Below are positions 6,501 through 35,990 of a stretch of 64,000 bases of DNA, in pieces. A program made the translations under genes and the position numbers. Within the stretch, counting starts at the first letter, position 1, and each line of letters starts with the position of its first letter. A model generated the notes under the pieces. It saw only the letters and a list, made by a program, of their open reading frames with translations. It ran no database searches and was not told the DNA's origin. The DNA lies in contig OZ365112.1 of assembly GCA_977030845.1 (NCBI GenBank), positions 13,888,001 through 13,952,000 of the forward strand, given 5' to 3'. This DNA comes from Fimbriosthenelais zetlandica (lineage: Eukaryota).

Positions 6501-7662
6501 TATCGCTGCCTCGGGAAAAAAACGATTCTCATCGGCAAAAACTGTTACACTGATTTGCACCAAATTCTTTGCCTGCACCTTTCAGGAATTTTTCAACAAT
6601 CTTCGTTTCAAGTATCTTCTTTTCAAGTGGTGAAAAATTTCCCAACCCCAACTTTCTTCTGTCAATTATTAACAAAATTGCCAATAACAGATTGTTGTTG
6701 AAAGGAAAACGCTGAATAGTTTTGGTGGAATATGGTCAACATGAAAGTGAAAGTAGTTCAAGACCTTTCTTTGCCAGCAAATTTGCGTGACCAAAGTAAC
6801 AGCAATTGTATGTATTTTGGATATATATTGCAGGCTGTTTTCCTTTGAATGTATCGATTTCTTTTTTACTTTGCGGTTGTAAAGGAGCACTTAAAATCAA
6901 AGAATTTGATCGATCCTTAAGAATTTCTAGCATTGAATTTGGACTGCTGCTAATTTTGTTGTGGAATTGCTTTTGAAAGCCTGAGTGATTTTCGAGTGAA
7001 TTCCTAGTGACTATTCTTGAGAATCTTCTGCTAGTTTGTATGCTGCCCTCGTCCCTTCCACTATGTATTTGGACCTAAATTTCTTGCTCTGTCAGCCTCC
7101 AAGTGACTTTCATCAGGTGCGCGAGGAGGAAAAATTTTGAAATACGAGCGACCCACTCTCCTTGCCTTCCAAAAGACATGTGTCAAATGTCTTCGACGCG
7201 GATCCATCATGATTATTATAAATGGAATGTCTACGGCGTCGGAATACTTCATTTCTAGCTTGGCCAAGCCATTCATATCGCCAGACGTTTACAAATGATG
7301 CTGGGAGGCGGGGTGGGACACAACTGAATTCGCCTCTCCTTCGTCATTGTCTTGAGGAAGGTAGAGAAGGGAAGACATGATCTATACCTCCCAGCCAGTT
7401 TGGCCATCGAGATAAGAACGGTAAATCATGTACGTCATTATGATTTATCTCAGTCTTTAATGAAAATATATCTACACTGATGAAACGCGTCCACGTCAAC
7501 AGGTGATTTACCGTAAATAAGAAAAAGATGGCTTCATTTGGGCAAAACATTCATTCATGATGACCGATTTTAGCCTGGTTTTGTTTGACTTTTTGAAATC
7601 CCCACAGCATCTGTAGAAATTGCCATGACCTTTACGAAACCTTCAAATCTCCATAGATTATT

Positions 7663-7682: not shown

Positions 7683-10345
7683 TATTGAGCTCTTTTTCAA
7701 ATTTCTATTGGGATTTTCATTTCATGTACCAAGGAAAAGACAATGTGAATCGAATTAATTCGATTGCTCTTGTAATTTGGCTGATCCATAAAAATGAAAC
7801 CGTGATAATTATTTCTTGAGGAGTCCAGTAGAAAAGCCAAAAAATAATATTGGAAATGGAAACAGAAAGGCTGGTGAAGGTTTAACATTTAGAGAAAGGT
7901 CGTAACCGGCACAGGTGTCAGGAAAAAATTGTGGCTTCGCTAAGAAAGAAGTATTTCTGTGAGGCTGAGATGGAGAAGGAGGAGGAGGGCGGAGAAAGGG
8001 AGATTTGTTAAGATTTCGGGCACGCCGTCCCTTGAATAGTGAATGGGGAAGGGCGCTTAGGTTTATGTCAGTTGTGGACCATTCATTTTGCATTTTAACA
8101 GCGAACACTTGGTGAATAATATACATGATATATGGCAGGCTCATCGCCACTCCTCCTCCTCCTGGGACTCAGAAGGGCCTTTCTTTTCCTCCAGGTTGCT
8201 CAGTCTTGCTTGGCTAGGGGCGACACGGCGTCTCCTACTCTAATGGCGACAATATTTTCTCCTCCATGCCATGCCTGGAGAATCGTCTGCATGGAGGAAA
8301 AGCAGGAGGAGGAGAAGAAGGAGAAGTAGGAGCAAGGGCTGGAGGAGGAGGATCCAGGTGGCATGGAAGACAATTCCCCCAGGTGGGGGGAAGAGTGCCC
8401 TTTGAATGGAGGGCTTCGGACAGGTGCCCTTTCAGCAGGTGTCCCGACCTTTGTGGGGCCGCAATGAATACGTGGCTATTAATCAGAGGGGGAGTGAGGA
8501 CGCGGACACCACACAACCCACTGGAGGCATATTCCAGCCTTTATCCTCCTCCTCCAGGCGCTCTCGCGCCAGCCCTCCTCCAGCCCAGTAATGGCAGCGC
8601 CCGTTTCGCCTTTCCAGGTAAGAATTCACTATTCCCTTTCATTGCCAAGTCCCGTGTTAAAACGTGACAGGGCCTATTCCTCCTCCGCCCAAGCATTAAC
8701 ACCCTCACTGGCTTCATCGGGAAATTCAAACTGCCAATCTTCCCTTCTGACTCAACCAACCAGGCATACTAATGCAGCCGCCCCCACCCTTCACTGGCTG
8801 ACAGTCATACCCCCACCCCTACCTCACTGCCCACAGGGGTGAGAAGGGCCATGGCCCTTGACTAGGCCCTTCGGTCCTTACCGTCCCCTTTCCCCCTGTG
8901 CCCCTCAACTGTGATAGGGCCCCGGCAAAATAAGGAATAAGAAGCTCTGGAGGGAGCGTTACGTTTCATGACAACCTCTCTTCGATGGCTCACACAACAA
9001 GTGACCTTCACCTTGCCATATTTGCAACAAAAACAGTCACGTGATGCTGCCATCGTTTAGGGCCTTGTCCGAATCGGTGTCGGGTCAGAGCCTGGTCTCC
9101 TTTCTCAGTCTCTCCCTTTCACGCCACTTCCCACACGCAAAGCTCGCGAACTATTCCCAATTTATTATGCCAAACACAATCACAAATACCTGCTTTCTCA
9201 CGTGTTGTTTTGCCCACACTTTCTCACTCATTTTAACACTGAAAAGACGGCTTGTAATTTAACTTGGACTGACAATGAATGGTGCTTTGTGACAAAGGCT
9301 CACGTTCAATTTGATGGCGTTGAGAAAGCTATTAAAATGTCTTTCTTTATTTTGACTAACATAGTTAATTTGTGCATTTTCTTATATTACAAAAAAAGAT
9401 AGGGAATCTGAAAAAGGAAGAAAAGCTATTCATTTCGATCGAAGCAACTGTATAACTAACTGTATTGTACCAACTTTAACGAAATACTATTTCAGAATAT
9501 CACGCGTATACGGTTTAAGATGGGGAGGCACTTGTAAAATCACAGTGAGGAGATTTACAGTGTGGTTGACATGCTAACGGGTCACATGACATAAACATGA
9601 GTGGCTAATGGGGTTAGTGTTCATTCCCTCAACCCTGCTCTCCACACTCCTATGTAACACTGTTTTCTCATATCATCCTGCTTTGGTCTTTGTTAATAAT
9701 AAAATCTAAAGTTTTCCCTTTGATATTTCCAGAAAGTTCCAGTCCTATACTTTGTACATAATGAGGCACGAGGAATGCGTAGAATAATAAGCTTTCTGAA
9801 GCTTTCTGTAGCTTATACAAACTACTGCATTTAATATACTTATTTCCTCGCTAAATGTCGGTTTCCTTATGTGATTGTCTAATTGTATATTCAATACAGA
9901 TTGGAGAAGCAAGTTTTATGGTTGAAATCAGTTCTCGATCATTGTTCTAATATTTATATTTGATTGGATGAGTCTTTCCAGTATGTTCCAGTATATTGGG
10001 TTCTACCTTTTCGCTCTATTTCTCCAATAGAACTTTTAACCAAGCCGAAAAATTCACGCCACATAAAACTTGTAAATGTATAAATTACATATTTTCACGT
10101 CAGGGGTGAAGGGGGGCGTGGAAAAGATCCTATATGTATCTATAAAGAAAATAGAGGTAGGAGGGGTGAAAGCACAATGACATGCATTCTTCAATTCTTT
10201 TTTTTCAGCTGCCACCCTTTAAAAACTTGAATTTACAACGAAATAGTATTTGCCCCAGTGTTCAGAGGCTTCGATTGGGGGAGACATGGAAAAATGGCCC
10301 TCATAGAATTAACCTTGTATGAGCCTTGGTTCTAATAGACCACAT

Positions 10346-10405
10346 TTACCCTGTAGAACCGAGCGAGTGTTTCCACCGTTTCACCACTCGTTTCTCAGGG
10401 GGTAT
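10346..10405 (+). ncRNA. mir-10: miR-10 family pre-miRNA hairpin (predicted 5p about 10346-10368 UUACCCUGUAGAACCGAGCGAGU; 3p about 10384-10405)
   Basis: The 5p arm shares UACCCUGUAGAACCGA with miR-10b-type sequences. The 3p arm CCACUCGUUUCUCAGGGGGUAU resembles miR-10 star arms. By hand it pairs as a near-symmetric stem with a 12-nt loop (10370-10381) and a basal stem (AATAGA 10334-10339 with TCTATT 10410-10415). It has an apical UGU (10368-10370) and a CNNC motif CATC at 10421-10424. The Hox-cluster context fits. Confidence 0.9.
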
Positions 10406-13400
10406 GTATTCTATTCGTTTCATCGAAGGAACGTCTTACTCTCCGGTCCCTCCAGGATACAACAGGTCGGTTAGAAGGACTCAAAACCGGGGGAGAAAAC
10501 GGGACAAACGATCGGGCATTTAGGTGGAGAAACTGGCTACGTGTAAGCCCTGTTCTTGTGACAATATCTCGAAGCAGAGTCCGTGTCGAACACTTACTAA
10601 GGCCCGAAGTTGTACGATGTCGGGCACTTGTAGGTATTCGTTATGGTTGCTTTGAAAGACAGCCCTTCAAGGACACGGGAGGAAGGAGGAGGAGGAGAGA
10701 GAAAAAACGGTAAACAAAAGTACAGGAATAATCAACGAGGACTGCTAACAGGTGGTGGTGGTCTGACTGAGTTCAGTCTGTTTCTCTAGGTCATAAAATA
10801 CTTGATTTGTTAGATGGAAAATTCAATTTTGAATTTGAATTATCTTCTGTTGCTGGTTGCATGTAACAGCGGTTGTTTTGGGAGCAAGTGATGAAATGTG
10901 TCATGGCCTACAGCGCTATACATACCCCTATGCTATAGCTATGTAGGCCATACATGTAGGTCTTAAATTATTTTCCATTGGCGAAAATATATGACTCAAA
11001 ATGTGTCAAATTATTATTAGGATTCGACCTACTAATTGAATGCAATTTTCTGAAATTGGAAGGGATGATGCAGGGTTTTTCTTTCTGATCTACATATGTC
11101 ATTGAAGTACCAATTCTATCTTGGTCTTTCCATGTCCATGGCTTTAATTGCATGCAACTATAAGAAGCAGCTCATTTCTTAGGTCACACACTGTTTTCTA
11201 TATCATACTATTACCTGGGATGAAGGTAATCCTTGCTTTGGCCTGTTTGTATTTCCGTTTATTATTCGGGTAGCCTATATCCCTCGCTTTCGCCCTTTTT
11301 GAATCACTCACTTTGGACATGGAGCTGCCCTGCTTATTGGAGGTCATCACTTCCGCCGGAAGTCAGATATCATCCGCGACCAAATTTCATTTTCAGGGTC
11401 AATGCTAGTGGAAGCTACAGGTCACTTCAACCCCTCCCTCCCCTCTGACTAATATATTCCTTATTCTGTTTATATATGGTCTCGGAACCCTGAGACTAAG
11501 GCGAGAAATATTGGCTCTCAAAGCTGGCTCTATGCATGAAGGATGGCTTATGCTAATTTTCCACACAGCTTTTGATCGATCTACCATGGAAATCGGTGTA
11601 AATAAAAAAGATGTAGGCTTCTCGCCTTAGGCACACATATATTAGGATTTACAGCTTGTCTCTTTTGATCCATTGATTTCTTTAGCTTGATCCAGCGCGG
11701 GAGATTTGTCAAATCCCCGTGAAATGATCATTAGATTTTCTTTCCTTTACAAACAAAATACAAAGCTCTAGGTCTGTGACCTTTCTGTCCTTTATGTTTG
11801 TAAATAGATTGTGAACGAGTTTTTTGCACCACCCACTTTTCCACCTCGTAGAACCCTTTATTTCAACCACAAATTCCATTCTTATAAGGACAATTAACAC
11901 TGATTTTATTCTCAGATTTGTCCATTTTCTTATTATTTAGTTGAAATTACAAGCTTTGTAATGTTATCATTTCCAATGAGTGCATGATATTGCAACCGAG
12001 GAAGAAAATCAATCGGAAATTATCAATATATCGTTTGAAGATGCTGTTTCAGCATTTTTAAATAACACCACAGCTATTTTCACTCTCAGCAAATCAATAG
12101 GCATTGGCTGCCTGTTTTTGTTTTTCAAAATAGAGTGAGTTAAGCCAAAGGCTACCGCCACCTCTTCCCCATTGTCAACGACCTCTTCTTCAAAGATGGC
12201 GGATCGTGACCATGGCACTCTCATGAAAGGGGACGGCACAAAGGAAGAAAGACAGAGGGGAGAGAGAAAAAGGGTTTGGATATATCCATTTTATTGAATA
12301 AAGGTCCTTCTGTCCCCTAGCCTGGCTTCCCTCCATTTGTCCCCCACCCCCCTCCTTCCTGTCCGCCCTCTGCCTCCATGGATACATTTGTAATAGGCGT
12401 TCCCCTGTGATGAAGATATGAACACCTAGGGGGAACTAGTCTTGCCACTCGTCTATATCCATAGCGTCAATTTCCATGATGCTTGGAGCATTCAAAATAC
12501 AAAATTTCGATTAAGAATTAAATGAAATTGGCCTATATATAAAACTAAAAGTGGCATGAAAGAACACCAAGAAGAAGTTCAGTGATAAAGTGCATGGTAA
12601 ATGCCCATAGAAGACCTGGGTTTTAAATCATTTTAAAGTGTGAGGATTTTAATGAAAATGGGACGCGCTTTATTGATAAATTACACATGGACCGTTTAAG
12701 TTGACATTACATGGAATCACTCTTTAATGCGACCATCTTCTTGGATGCATTTTGTCACTGAGACCTCCCCTCTTGGCCTCTTGCGATCCAAAACATTATC
12801 AGACGCTTAGGCAAGGCAGCCTTTAACATTTAATCCCAGGGGAAAATTTGTTATTACGATGATGCACGAGGGAAGGGCCAAACTGCGACGCCAAGGTGAG
12901 GTGTAATGGGAAAATATGTCCCCGAAAGGGTCCTCTAATTGGCAAGTTAACGCCACCAAGATGCATTCAGGCTCACGTTCTATGCAATCACAGACACCAG
13001 GAGCGCATAGATTCTCCACATGGACATTTTGGGAGGGATCCCCATATTTGGGAGGGATCAGAGCTTGGCAAGGTCTTGGTAATGATGCGGCAGTTGGAGG
13101 TGGTGACAGGTAAAAATGGCTGGCGACTTTTGGAGGATGTGCCTGTGGAGGCAATGAGAGGAGCTGGAGGAAGCTGATTGTTCTTGCTGCGACTAATGAT
13201 GAGGTATTGCGTGCGTTCACGAGCGCCCACCTCCAACTAAGGGGGTGTTAGAGAGAAGGTGCTTTGCCCTGCTGGATGTGAAGACGGTTGGATCCCACAT
13301 TGATGGGGGATCCTTTGTGAGTTTCTAACGTCGTCTCAGCCCTTTTGATCCTCAGCTTATGATGCAGGGAGAGGAGGATATGCCATTGAGTTAGCTAAGA

Positions 13401-27306: not shown

Positions 27307-27778
27307 ATGAACACGTATTTCCCAAATCCGTTCCTCTCACCTCTCCAAGGGGACGGGCAAGGGAACCCAGGTTCCCTGCCCTGTAACTTCGGTGGACTCT
27401 CCAGTCGGTATGACGGACAACAATCCGGGGGGCCCGCGGCGGGCCAGGGCTTTCTCAACCCAGGAATGACTGGACAGTACAATTCACCCAGTCCAAATCA
27501 TCACCATATGACCGCAGCAGGAGCCCAGGACCCTACCTGTCCAAGAACCAGTGAACTCAACGGCTATGATGGTCAAACACATGGACATATGACCAGTAGT
27601 ACCCCTGGATGGGGGTCAGCCGCTGGACACCCTCAACATAGCCCCTCCGATACCTATGCTAACAGCTTACCGCAAAATGGCTCGGACAATCTCATTTCGG
27701 GTACTTGTACGAATCAACACCAAAGCTACACCACCACAAGCCAACCTATACCTTTCTACCCATGGATGGGCGTTGTAG
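27307..27778 (+). CDS. Lox4: Lox4 (Ubx/abd-A-class Hox gene), coding exon 1
   Basis: ATG in A-rich context (aaaaaaATG). The N-terminus MNTYFPNPF resembles the Hox MSSYF/MNSYF motif. The ORF ends ...IPFYPWMGVV (hexapeptide YPWM at 27757-27768), followed at once by a consensus donor G|GTAAGT (GT at 27779-27780), phase 1. Confidence 0.95.
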
Positions 27779-27897
27779 GTAAGTAAAAATGCCTTCTATC
27801 AGTTCTTATATTTCTTCCCTTGCTTGGGAGTGTTTGGGTAGTCATATTGGTTGAGGAGCAGTGAGTAGAGGGAAGAGCCAGTAGTGAGTGCTAGAGC

Positions 27898-33973: not shown

Positions 33974-34306
<333 letters not shown>

Positions 34307-35990
34307 TTCTTCTTCAGCATTTAACAAGCTTCGCCGTGTGCTTCAACCACTTCCAACACAGGAGAGAAAGAATCATAAAACAAAACCCGTGAGAGCATTG
34401 GTTACCCTTTTTTGTGATGACTACATACAGGCATTTGGGGCTCCTAGCAATACAATTACCTATAGTAGAAAGAGGGGGCAAGCCATCATGGGTCCTTGGT
34501 TTTTTTTTGGAAGTTTGGTAAAGGCATATAGGGGGTGTTCAGCTGTAAGGAACCTGCTGAGGTACAATATATAACTGTGCCTCTTGCAGGGTCCACCAGC
34601 TGGTAATGGCTAAGATGTTTATGGAGAGATGATTATAATGATTCTGATGATGATGTCCTTACTCGTCATTTGACCTCTTTACCTCGTGCGCATCTTCATT
34701 ACTATGGAAATGAGGTATTATCCTGTCCTCGCCAGGGCACCACTGTTTTGTGGGTCTACTGCGTGGTGATTTTTTATTTCTCTCCCTCGCCAAAGATGAT
34801 TTTCGATATTTGTTTGCTAAGAGACAGAGTTAGTATGTCCAAATTATTAACGGGAACGATGACACTGCCTCTCCTGTAGAGAAAAGGGCACATTCACTCT
34901 CAAAACACACCAAAAAAAGATGTAAAAATGTTCAGCTACCGACGTTGATACAATGTGGGATAGTCTTTTATATTTAAACATGAATTGGAGGAATTCATTC
35001 CAAACGCTCCGTATGTCTGTCAGTTTGACCACTCGGGGGTTTGAGATGTTAGCGATATATGACACGCAGACCTGCAGGGCCCATTGAGAAGAAAATAATA
35101 ATTTTAGATAATGTAAATGATTGTAAGGTGTATTGTAATGTGACTGAGGGACAAAAAAAATGTAAATTTGCTTTTCTTTGGGTAGCGATATGGTTGTGTG
35201 TCTGAAGCGCAGTGTTTTGGAGCATTTTTGTCTGTGTCTGGCAGCACGTTTGAATGAGTGGTGTAAACAAATATTGTTATACATAAATGTACTCATGTCT
35301 GTCTTGTAAAAAATAATCAGCATCTTCAGGGTAACGATTAACAGTGTAACAATAGATCGACACAGGGAGCAAGGGAGGAGACTTGGTAGAAAGAAAGCTA
35401 ATGAATGAAGCCAGCATATTGGGCCTGAAACATAATGTTCACATTCTTTCCAAGTATATCCCCTTTTATAAACTCTGTTTCAATCATGTACTGTTCTTGG
35501 AAATATATGAATAACTCTTGGAAATATGGTTTTCAGATGGAAATGGCAAAAAGTAAGGTGTCCAGGATCATAATTTAAAATTGACAGGAGAGCTGGGGAT
35601 GTCCTGGAAAGCACCAAGTAACCTAGAGGTTTGCTTTTGGTTGCAGGGTCAGGTCATCTATTAGATTCTATCTTCAGGTTTGTTTGGGTTCGCCGCGGTG
35701 TGCCCAGGCAGGTCTTTGTGGTCGCTTATTGTAATGTTGGGAGCCTGGGGAGAAGGCGTGGAAGATTTACGATATATTGGCTGGTAAAGGTGTGACTGGC
35801 CATCAGGGAAGTGTGGAGACTCACACCTGTAGTGTTTCTCACACTATCCTCACTCTGACGAGCCTCAGGTAGGCTTACATGACCTTAACCTCACCTCACC
35901 TACAATAGTGACCTCAATATAGAGGTTATGGCCGTGATCCACTGGCTCAATTTGGCAGAGGTTGCACTTTTGGAAAATGTTCATTAAATT
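34307..35990 (+). other. Putative Lox4 3' UTR (end uncertain)
   Basis: AU-rich sequence follows the stop. I saw no AATAAA or ATTAAA until ATTAAA at 35983-35988; the next AATAAA is at 36781. The boundary is a guess. Confidence 0.35.

What the first reader, a model, noticed from the sequence alone, without database searches (positions are those of the whole stretch)
10334..10424. Extra Hox-cluster miR-10 paralogue upstream of Lox4 with a predicted seed shift
Seen: a complete pre-miRNA-like hairpin with basal stem, apical UGU and a correctly spaced CNNC, on the same strand as Lox4 and 17 kb upstream of it. Known: canonical miR-10 sits between Dfd/Hox4 and Scr/Hox5, not next to a Ubx/abd-A-class gene. 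From memory, lophotrochozoans carry extra Mir-10 paralogues and one has a similar UUACCCUG...CGAGCGAGU sequence, so the gene itself may already be catalogued. Inference: Drosha cuts at 10346, giving seed UACCCUG instead of ACCCUGU and therefore a partly different target set.
Basis: partly seen in the sequence, partly recalled or inferred. Interest (0 to 1): 0.72.

Follow-up and report, generated by a model that had tools for sequence, protein, structure and literature searches.

The report
Known seed-shifted miR-10 paralogue beside Lox4
The hairpin is real and is this probable annelid's copy of an already catalogued Hox-cluster microRNA (Mir-10-P5, also called cte-miR-10b or cgi-miR-10a), whose one-base seed shift and place upstream of Lox4 are published for other annelids and molluscs, so it is ordinary apart from being present in three or more copies here.

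Summary
Window 10334-10415 (+) folds into a pre-miRNA-type hairpin. It has a UGU at the apical junction and a CNNC 16 nt after the predicted 3p cut, and it lies 16.9 kb upstream of Lox4 exon 1 on the same strand.

The interpretation also holds, but the gene is not new. From 10346 the 5p arm is 23/23 identical to oyster cgi-miR-10a-5p and 23/24 identical to Platynereis Pdu-Mir-10-P5_5p. Small-RNA reads in oyster put 99.65% of 5p reads at the UUACCC start. MirGeneDB-based annotation in Platynereis, Eisenia and Lottia starts at the same base. A 2025 paper states that Mir-10-P5 starts one nt 5' of the ancestral cut.

Synteny agrees. In this genome the Hox-cluster order is P6, Post2, Lox2, P5, Lox4, Antp, P7, Lox5, Hox5, P1, Hox4, P4, the same miRNA order as in Platynereis. 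In Lottia (sequence read here) and Capitella (by coordinates) P5 also sits just upstream of Lox4.

What is specific to this genome is the copy number: three intact P5 copies plus two weaker candidates in the 292-kb Lox2-Lox4 interval. The copies are similar only across the hairpin.

No sequencing run was listed, so the 5' end in this species is inferred by homology, not measured. Interest is low.

The parts
10334..10415 (+). pri-miRNA stem (basal stem, miRNA duplex and loop) of a Mir-10-P5 orthologue
   Evidence: MFE fold and pair table. The P5-specific covariance model R1 scores 88.9 bits on 10336-10415, but this copy is one of the model's own seed sequences. Rfam RF00104 scores 39.1 bits.
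10346..10369 (+). predicted 5p mature miRNA (UUACCCUGUAGAACCGAGCGAGUG), seed UACCCUG
   Evidence: It is identical to the most abundant oyster isoform of cgi-miR-10a-5p, a 24-mer with 123,805 reads. It is 23/24 identical to Pdu-Mir-10-P5_5p. The start is inferred by homology, not measured here.
10370..10383 (+). terminal loop; this is the part that differs most between the paralogues
10384..10405 (+). predicted 3p (star) strand, CCACUCGUUUCUCAGGGGGUAU
   Evidence: It pairs with the 5p strand leaving 2-nt 3' overhangs. It aligns with the Platynereis star sequence ccacucaguucacagggucauu.
10368..10370 (+). apical UGU motif
   Evidence: The same motif is present at the same offset (nt 23) in all four copies read from this genome.
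10421..10424 (+). CNNC motif (CAUC), 16 nt after the inferred 3p Drosha cut
   Evidence: The equivalent motif lies at +18, +17 and +17 in copies 13760124, 13770198 and Lottia, and is absent in copy 13837004.
27307..27780 (+). Lox4 exon 1 (ATG to about the splice donor after the FYPWM hexapeptide)
   Evidence: ORF list and motif scan.
34022..34306 (+). Lox4 homeodomain exon, from the homeodomain start to the stop codon
   Evidence: The homeodomain is identical to the Capitella orthologue on KB310318.1. The Lox4 assignment rests on cluster order, between Antp and Lox2.
35327..35334 (+). candidate target site CAGGGUAA, an 8-mer for seed UACCCUG, 1021 nt after the Lox4 stop
   Evidence: Capitella Lox4 has the same 8-mer 1090 nt after its stop. 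The extent of the 3'UTR is unknown.

Best explanation
The hairpin is a working miRNA gene. It is one of at least three tandemly dispersed orthologues of the lophotrochozoan Hox-cluster miRNA Mir-10-P5 (cte-miR-10b, cgi-miR-10a).

Proposed processing (inferred): it is transcribed on the Hox (+) strand. Drosha crops it at 10345|10346 and 10405|10406, and Dicer cuts at 10369|10370 and 10383|10384. The 5p strand UUACCCUGUAGAACCGAGCGAGU(G) is loaded into Argonaute.

Consequence: this 5p strand starts one nt 5' of the canonical miR-10 register, so its seed is UACCCUG rather than ACCCUGU, and it prefers CAGGGUA(A) sites. Candidate targets are its own downstream neighbour Lox4 and the more anterior genes Hox5 and Hox1. 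This would follow the same 'posterior miRNA represses anterior Hox' logic as miR-10, miR-196 and iab-4.

Shown here: sequence identity, hairpin geometry, hairpin-restricted conservation between the copies, and synteny. Inferred: expression, the exact cuts in this species, and the targets.
For: Sequence identity:
- The 5p arm is 23/23 identical to cgi-miR-10a-5p and 23/24 identical to Pdu-Mir-10-P5_5p.
- The Platynereis supplement notes that this mature sequence is fully conserved in Cgi, Cte and Efe.

Register in orthologues:
- Oyster read pile-up: 215,771 reads start UUACCC, 325 start UACCC and 303 start UUUACCC.
- PMC12257675 states that Mir-10-P5 starts one nt 5' of the ancestral cut.

Conservation and structure:
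- The three intact copies are similar only over about 70-80 nt of hairpin; 1.5-kb flanks on each side are unalignable.
- Compensatory AU<->GC changes occur in the basal stem, and a GC<->AU change occurs at the apical end.
- Model R1 finds hits genome-wide only inside the Hox cluster.

Synteny:
- The order P6, P5, P7, P1, P4 equals the Platynereis order.
- The Lottia P5 hairpin lies at L045:6862-6924, about 3 kb upstream of the Lox4 hexapeptide exon. The Capitella P5 coordinates lie about 14 kb upstream of Lox4, on the same strand.

Targets:
- CAGGGTAA occurs 3 times in 11.9 kb downstream of nine Hox stop codons (Lox4, Hox5, Hox1). The mean for 1120 same-composition permutations is 0.154, and 0.09% of them reach 3.
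- Capitella Lox4 has the same 8-mer at a similar distance from its stop.
Against: - No small-RNA or RNA run could be listed for this organism, so expression, arm choice and the 5' end are untested here.
- Hairpin geometry alone does not separate 10346 from 10347. The basal junction gives 12-13 nt, and both positions are U.
- The fold z-score is modest at -2.65, and the Rfam score is below the gathering threshold.
- With several copies present, this one could be poorly expressed. Its 24-nt 5p is identical to that of copy 13837004, so 5p reads alone could not prove that this locus is active.
- 3'UTR extents are unknown. The target enrichment was tested post hoc. The Lottia Lox4 downstream 4 kb has no site.
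Confidence: 0.85

Rival explanations
1. The hairpin is processed in the canonical register, so the mature miRNA starts at 10347 (UACCCUGU..., seed ACCCUGU). It would then be a dosage copy of miR-10/Mir-10-P7 differing only in its 3' half.
For: A 13-nt measure from the basal junction at 10333/10334 points to 10346|10347, and 10347 is also a U. The lengths of the basal stems differ between the copies, so the cut could drift in this lineage.
Against: An orthologue with an identical 23-nt 5p is cut in the shifted register in 99.65% of oyster reads. The same start is annotated in Platynereis, Eisenia and Lottia. The Hox-linked sites at Lox4 and Hox5 are full 8-mers only for the shifted seed.
Confidence: 0.08
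2. This copy is a silent or decaying duplicate. Only one of the P5 paralogues in the Lox2-Lox4 interval is expressed, and this hairpin persists by recent descent.
For: At least one neighbouring copy (C13:13770187) has a degraded 3p arm and scores only 36.1 bits. This shows that copies do decay here.
Against: The flanks of the three good copies have diverged beyond alignment, while the hairpin, its pairing and the UGU motif are kept; the CNNC is kept in two of the three. That pattern is the signature of purifying selection, not recent duplication. This copy is also the best-scoring one (88.9 bits), although it is one of the sequences the model was built from.
Confidence: 0.07
3. The locus is (also) transcribed antisense and yields a minus-strand miRNA, as with iab-4/iab-8 and Platynereis Mir-10-P4-1.
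For: The minus strand folds equally well, at -33.9 kcal/mol and z = -2.93. It matches RF00104 at 17.7 bits and R1 at 35.3 bits. Bidirectional processing is documented for another Hox Mir-10 paralogue in Platynereis.
Against: Any near-symmetric hairpin folds on both strands. No orthologue of P5 is annotated as bidirectional in the sources read. There are no expression data here.
Confidence: 0.1

Closest known systems
MirGeneDB Mir-10-P5 (Pdu-, Cte-, Lgi-, Cgi-, Efe-Mir-10-P5; miRBase-style cte-miR-10b / cgi-miR-10a)
   Same: The 5p mature sequence is the same (23/23 to the oyster sequence, 23/24 to Platynereis). The shifted start UUACCC, the use of the 5p arm in the orthologues, and the place in the Hox cluster (upstream of Lox4, same strand, between P6 and P7) all agree.
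   Different: There are three intact copies plus two weaker ones here, against one copy listed for Platynereis, Capitella and Lottia and two for Eisenia. The loop and parts of the 3p arm differ. Expression in this species is untested.
Canonical miR-10 (Mir-10-P1)
   Same: Same family. It shares ACCCUGUAGA and the hairpin architecture, and it resides in the Hox cluster.
   Different: P1 lies between Hox5 and Hox4 (C13:14214049 here). It starts one nt later, giving seed ACCCUGU, and its 3' half is AUCCGAAUUUGU rather than AACCGAGCGAGU.
miR-1991 / Mir-10-P6
   Same: It is a lophotrochozoan Hox-cluster Mir-10 paralogue whose 5' start is shifted upstream (UUUACCCUG in Platynereis).
   Different: It lies between Post2 and Post1 in oyster, Lottia and Capitella. 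A separate P6-like hairpin exists here at C13:13565514. The Rfam mir-1991 model gives only 16.8 bits on the finding.
Mir-10-P7 (annelid paralogue, CACCCUGUAGAACCGAGCUUGU)
   Same: It shares AACCGAGC in the 3' half and resides in the Hox cluster.
   Different: It uses the canonical seed register and lies beside Antp (C13:14057994 here, with a 5p identical to Pdu-Mir-10-P7).
miR-iab-4/8 (arthropods) and miR-196 (vertebrates)
   Same: These are miRNAs embedded in the posterior half of the Hox cluster that target more anterior Hox genes. The Platynereis paper describes this as 'genomic parallelism'.
   Different: The sequences are unrelated, and they are not members of the Mir-10 family.

Membership tests
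MirGeneDB Mir-10-P5 (cte-miR-10b / cgi-miR-10a) | 5p mature sequence matches the catalogued P5 mature sequence | tested here: met
   Window 10346-10368 equals cgi-miR-10a-5p (TTACCCTGTAGAACCGAGCGAGT) at 23/23. It matches Pdu-Mir-10-P5_5p at 23/24.
MirGeneDB Mir-10-P5 (cte-miR-10b / cgi-miR-10a) | Hairpin whose two arms form a roughly 22-nt duplex with 2-nt 3' overhangs | tested here: met
   In silico only. 5p 10346-10369 and 3p 10384-10405 give 2-nt overhangs at both ends. Applied to the Lottia hairpin, the same rule gives 6862-6924, which equals the listed Lgi-Mir-10-P5 coordinates.
MirGeneDB Mir-10-P5 (cte-miR-10b / cgi-miR-10a) | Position in the Hox cluster: on the posterior side of Lox4, on the Hox strand, in the order P6-P5-P7-P1-P4 | tested here: met
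   Hox and hairpin map of contig C13. Platynereis order. The Lottia hairpin is about 3 kb upstream of Lox4, and the Capitella coordinates are about 14 kb upstream of Lox4.
MirGeneDB Mir-10-P5 (cte-miR-10b / cgi-miR-10a) | Mature 5' end one nt upstream of the Mir-10-P1 register (seed UACCCUG) | not testable with these tools
   No run was listed for this organism, so read laying could not be used. The feature is documented in orthologues.
MirGeneDB Mir-10-P5 (cte-miR-10b / cgi-miR-10a) | Reads from both arms (the MirGeneDB expression criterion) | not testable with these tools
   No run was listed.
Rfam RF00104 mir-10 | Covariance-model score at or above the gathering threshold of 47.5 bits | tested here: not met
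   The score is 39.1 bits, with E = 3e-8 locally and 8.9e-6 genome-wide. This genome's canonical miR-10 also fails at 42.5 bits, and only the mir-100-like locus passes at 52.1. The threshold is therefore uninformative for these paralogues.
miR-1991 / Mir-10-P6 (Rfam RF03858) | Model match and a location between Post2 and Post1 | tested here: not met
   The score is 16.8 bits against a gathering score of 66. The finding lies between Lox2 and Lox4. A distinct P6-like hairpin is at C13:13565514.
Canonical miR-10 (Mir-10-P1) | Location between Hox5 and Hox4, and a 3' half reading AUCCGAAUUUGU | tested here: not met
   The location is Lox2-Lox4 and the 3' half reads AACCGAGCGAGU.

The most novel reading that the evidence does not exclude
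This lineage has amplified the seed-shifted Mir-10-P5 into three to five dispersed copies inside an unusually long (292 kb) Lox2-Lox4 interval. These copies would act together as a dosage-boosted repressor of Lox4, Hox5 and Hox1 through CAGGGUAA sites, one of which (in Lox4) is shared with Capitella. That would be an annelid counterpart of the iab-4 and miR-196 circuits, built from a duplicated miR-10.
Probability: 0.3. Interest if true: 0.45.

Novelty: new member of a known kind. Interest (0 to 1): 0.2.

Why it matters
It matters little as a discovery. The family, its seed shift and its place in the Hox cluster are already published, so the main value is a correct annotation of this genome.

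Two modest points go beyond the catalogue. First, P5 is multi-copy here, with duplicates old enough that only the hairpins remain alignable. Second, perfect 8-mers for the shifted seed are enriched after Hox stop codons, and one is shared with Capitella Lox4. That gives a concrete, testable case of a duplicated and seed-shifted miR-10 regulating Hox genes in a spiralian.

Tried and rejected
- Rfam at gathering thresholds found nothing in the whole window. The mir-10 match appeared only in an E-value scan.
- miR-1991 identity was considered and rejected on score and synteny.
- A repeat or transposon origin was rejected. Genome-wide DNA, pattern and covariance-model searches find relatives only inside the Hox cluster.
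- Two run searches, on the hairpin region and on Lox4 exon 1, listed no runs. No reads could be laid, and the 5' end stays unmeasured.
The 41.1-bit candidate at C13:13786531 was therefore not read, and I did not try to obtain it by another route.
- A full-text search for the mature sequence found no paper. The sequences came from supplements instead.
- The protein search gave no 'Lox4' names. The Lox4 assignment rests on cluster order and on identity to the Capitella and Lottia genes next to P5.
- Lox4 downstream regions are not alignable between this genome, Capitella and Lottia. The shared 8-mer is an isolated island, not part of a conserved block.
Full report
**Observation**

Folded as RNA, window 10320-10430 gives one long hairpin of -33.4 kcal/mol, with z = -2.65 and 2 of 200 shuffles folding as well.

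The pair table shows three stem segments:
- a basal stem, 10334-10339 with 10410-10415 and 10342-10345 with 10404-10407;
- a 3x3 internal loop;
- an upper stem, 10349-10369 with 10382-10400, closing a 14-nt loop at 10370-10383.

UGU sits at 10368-10370. The only downstream CNNC (CAUC) is at 10421-10424. If the 5p strand is 10346-10369 and the 3p strand is 10384-10405, both ends have 2-nt 3' overhangs and the CNNC begins 16 nt after the 3p end.

The only Hox gene in the window has exon 1 at 27307 to about 27780 (ending ...PFYPWMGVVG) and a homeodomain exon ending at 34306, both on the + strand. The hairpin is therefore 16.9 kb upstream on the same strand. There are no N runs in the window.

**Is it more than chance?**

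Rfam finds nothing at gathering thresholds. An E-value scan gives mir-10 (RF00104) at 39.1 bits, E = 3e-8, over the full model, and the whole-genome scan lists the locus at E = 8.9e-6. The gathering score of 47.5 is not a useful bar here, because this genome's canonical miR-10 also falls below it at 42.5 bits.

The 15-mer TACCCTGTAGAACCG occurs exactly three times in the 447-Mb assembly. All three are on the + strand of one interval of contig C13.

**Map of the Hox cluster**

The window is C13:13888001-13952000. Ten homeoboxes lie on the + strand of C13. Their translations identify them as follows:

| C13 position | Gene | Basis |
|---|---|---|
| 13590791 | Post2-type | homeodomain type |
| 13623024 | Lox2-type | KFNRYLTRRRRIELSH...KEKKEIQTIKELNE |
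| 13922022 | the window's gene | [16 protein letters not shown]...[14 protein letters not shown] |
| 14054747 | Antp | position |
| 14101996 | Lox5 | KLTGP |
| 14159885 | Hox5 | position |
| 14257560 | Hox4 | KLPNTK |
| 14416213, 14453691, 14492274 | Hox3, Hox2, Hox1 | position |

By position the window's gene is Lox4. Its homeodomain is identical to a Capitella teleta gene and nearly identical to a Lottia gene. The best named protein hits are annelids, Paralvinella and Capitella. The genome is therefore probably an annelid.

miR-10-like hairpins interleave with these genes:
- a P6/miR-1991-like hairpin at 13565514 (5p UUUACCCUGUAAAUAGAGGAUGU, -39.7 kcal/mol);
- the finding and its paralogues, between Lox2 and Lox4;
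- a hairpin at 14057994 whose 5p CACCCUGUAGAACCGAGCUUGU equals Pdu-Mir-10-P7;
- canonical miR-10 at 14214049, between Hox5 and Hox4;
- a miR-993-like hairpin at 14356674, between Hox4 and Hox3.

A miR-100-like hairpin lies on another contig, C38 (L001).

**Identity**

The Platynereis genome paper says annelids duplicated Mir-10-P1 within the Hox cluster. It also says Mir-10-P5 is a lophotrochozoan-specific paralogue and that it starts one nt 5' of the ancestral cut (PMC12257675).

The supplement of its preprint version gives Pdu-Mir-10-P5_5p as UUACCCUGUAGAACCGAGCGAGUA, with 3405 mature and 7 star reads. It notes full conservation of that mature sequence in Cgi, Cte and Efe. It lists the cluster orders P6-P5-P7-P1-P4 for Platynereis, P4-P1-P7-P5 for Capitella and P6-P5-P1 for Lottia. 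The finding's 5p arm from 10346 matches the Platynereis sequence at 23 of 24 positions, and the miRNA order on C13 is the same as in Platynereis.

The oyster deep-sequencing paper (PMC4138081) lists cgi-miR-10a-5p as TTACCCTGTAGAACCGAGCGAGT, with cte-miR-10b as its homologue. That is 23/23 identical to window 10346-10368.

The read pile-up for that oyster locus gives these 5p start counts:

| 5p read start | Reads |
|---|---|
| UUACCC | 215,771 |
| UACCC | 325 |
| UUUACCC | 303 |
| shorter starts | 128 |

So 99.65% of 5p reads are in the shifted register. The most abundant isoform, a 24-mer with 123,805 reads, equals window 10346-10369.

Eisenia P5a and P5b also begin UUACCCUG. An earlier review had already noted that Capitella miR-10b and miR-1991 may be seed-shifted, and that Capitella has extra Hox-embedded miR-10 copies (PMC3394115). 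miR-1991 itself lies between Post2 and Post1 (PMC4138081), so it is a different paralogue.

**Synteny in other species, checked on sequence**

The Lottia gene most like this Lox4 lies on KB200129.1. In the fetched locus, a -34.2 kcal/mol hairpin with 5p UUACCCUGUAGUACCGAGCAAGUG sits at L045:6862-6924. Those are exactly the coordinates listed for Lgi-Mir-10-P5. It lies about 3 kb upstream of the hexapeptide exon, on the same strand.

In Capitella the Lox4 exons are at about 394.0-397.6 kb on the minus strand of KB310318.1. Cte-Mir-10-P5 is listed at 411,688-411,746 (-), which is about 14 kb upstream. This comparison uses coordinates only, and it assumes that the supplement's scaffold_70 is KB310318.1. 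I did not read the Capitella hairpin sequence.

'P5 just upstream of Lox4' is therefore shared by a mollusc and annelids. It is not an oddity of this genome.

**Paralogues**

A covariance model was built from the finding, two paralogues, the Lottia hairpin and the Platynereis precursor. Genome-wide it hits only inside the Hox cluster:

| C13 position | Bits | Note |
|---|---|---|
| 13898336 | 88.9 | the finding |
| 13836994 | 86.0 | intact copy |
| 13760114 | 80.8 | intact copy |
| 13770187 | 36.1 | 5p kept, 3p arm degraded |
| 14057988 | 32.2 | P7 |

The top three hits are themselves seed sequences of the model, so their scores match by construction. The informative result is that nothing outside the Hox cluster scores.

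Pairwise BLAST of 3-kb loci shows that similarity between the copies is confined to 69-80 nt of hairpin. RNAalifold finds compensatory AU<->GC changes at two basal-stem pairs, and a GC<->AU change at the apical end in Platynereis. This is the pattern expected of old duplicates kept by selection on the hairpin.

**Mechanism and targets**

By homology, the product is a 23-24-nt 5p miRNA with seed UACCCUG. Its 8-mer site is CAGGGUAA.

That 8-mer occurs 1021 nt after the Lox4 stop (window 35327-35334). It also occurs downstream of the Hox5 and Hox1 stops. That makes three occurrences in 11.9 kb, against a mean of 0.154 for 1120 same-composition permutations, of which 0.09% reach three.

Capitella Lox4 has the same 8-mer 1090 nt after its stop, in sequence that is otherwise unalignable. 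Lottia has none within 4 kb.

The Lox4 and Hox5 sites are only 7mer-A1 sites for the canonical seed, so they fit the shifted register better. They also contain a 7-mer site for the P6 seed. This evidence is suggestive only, because the 3'UTR ends are unknown and the test was post hoc.

**What could not be done**

No sequencing run was listed for either query. Expression, arm usage and the 5' end in this species remain inferred. Geometry alone cannot separate 10346 from 10347. The antisense strand folds as well as the sense strand, which is expected for a hairpin and is not evidence of antisense processing.

**Verdict**

It is an orthologue of a catalogued miRNA whose seed shift and Hox position are already published. 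The only features particular to this genome are the three to five copies in the long Lox2-Lox4 interval and the candidate Hox target sites.

Noticed in passing
G000:C13:13836994-13837070 (L011) and C13:13760114-13760191 (L009), + strand: Two further intact Mir-10-P5 hairpins lie 61 kb and 138 kb upstream of the finding. The first has an identical 24-nt 5p. The second differs at two 5p positions (CCGGGUGAG). The flanks are unalignable.
   Followed up: yes
G000:C13:13770187-13770269 (L035:588-670) and C13:13786531-13786610: Two weaker P5-like hits. The first keeps the 5p arm (UUACCCUGUCGAACCGAGCGAGUG) but has a degraded 3p arm.
   Followed up: partly
G000:C13:13565514 (L040), + strand: A strong hairpin (-39.7 kcal/mol) has the 5p UUUACCCUGUAAAUAGAGGAUGU, resembling Mir-10-P6/miR-1991. 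It lies upstream of the Post2-type homeobox. No Post1 homeobox was found in the pieces fetched or at E <= 1e-8.
   Followed up: partly
G000:C13:14057994-14058066 (L005), + strand: A hairpin (-47.2 kcal/mol) whose 5p CACCCUGUAGAACCGAGCUUGU is identical to Pdu-Mir-10-P7, which is listed as annelid-specific. It lies about 3 kb after the Antp homeobox.
   Followed up: partly
G000:C13:14214049 (L002), C13:14356674 (L008) and C38:8162916 (L001): Three more family members: canonical miR-10 (AACCCUGUAGAUCCGAAUUUGUG) between Hox5 and Hox4; a miR-993-like hairpin between Hox4 and Hox3; and a miR-100-like hairpin on another contig whose 5p is identical to Pdu-Mir-10-P2.
   Followed up: partly
window 35327-35334; L017:2534; L021:3087-3095 and 2247; L044 at +1090 nt after the stop: CAGGGTAA, the 8-mer for the shifted seed, lies downstream of the Lox4, Hox5 and Hox1 stops, and also downstream of the Capitella Lox4 stop. 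Hox1 additionally has canonical miR-10 8-mers (ACAGGGTA).
   Followed up: partly
G000:C13:13623200-13915307: The Lox2-Lox4 interval is about 292 kb, far longer than Post2-Lox2 (about 32 kb) or Antp-Lox5 (about 47 kb). It holds all the P5 copies. What else it contains was not examined.
   Followed up: no
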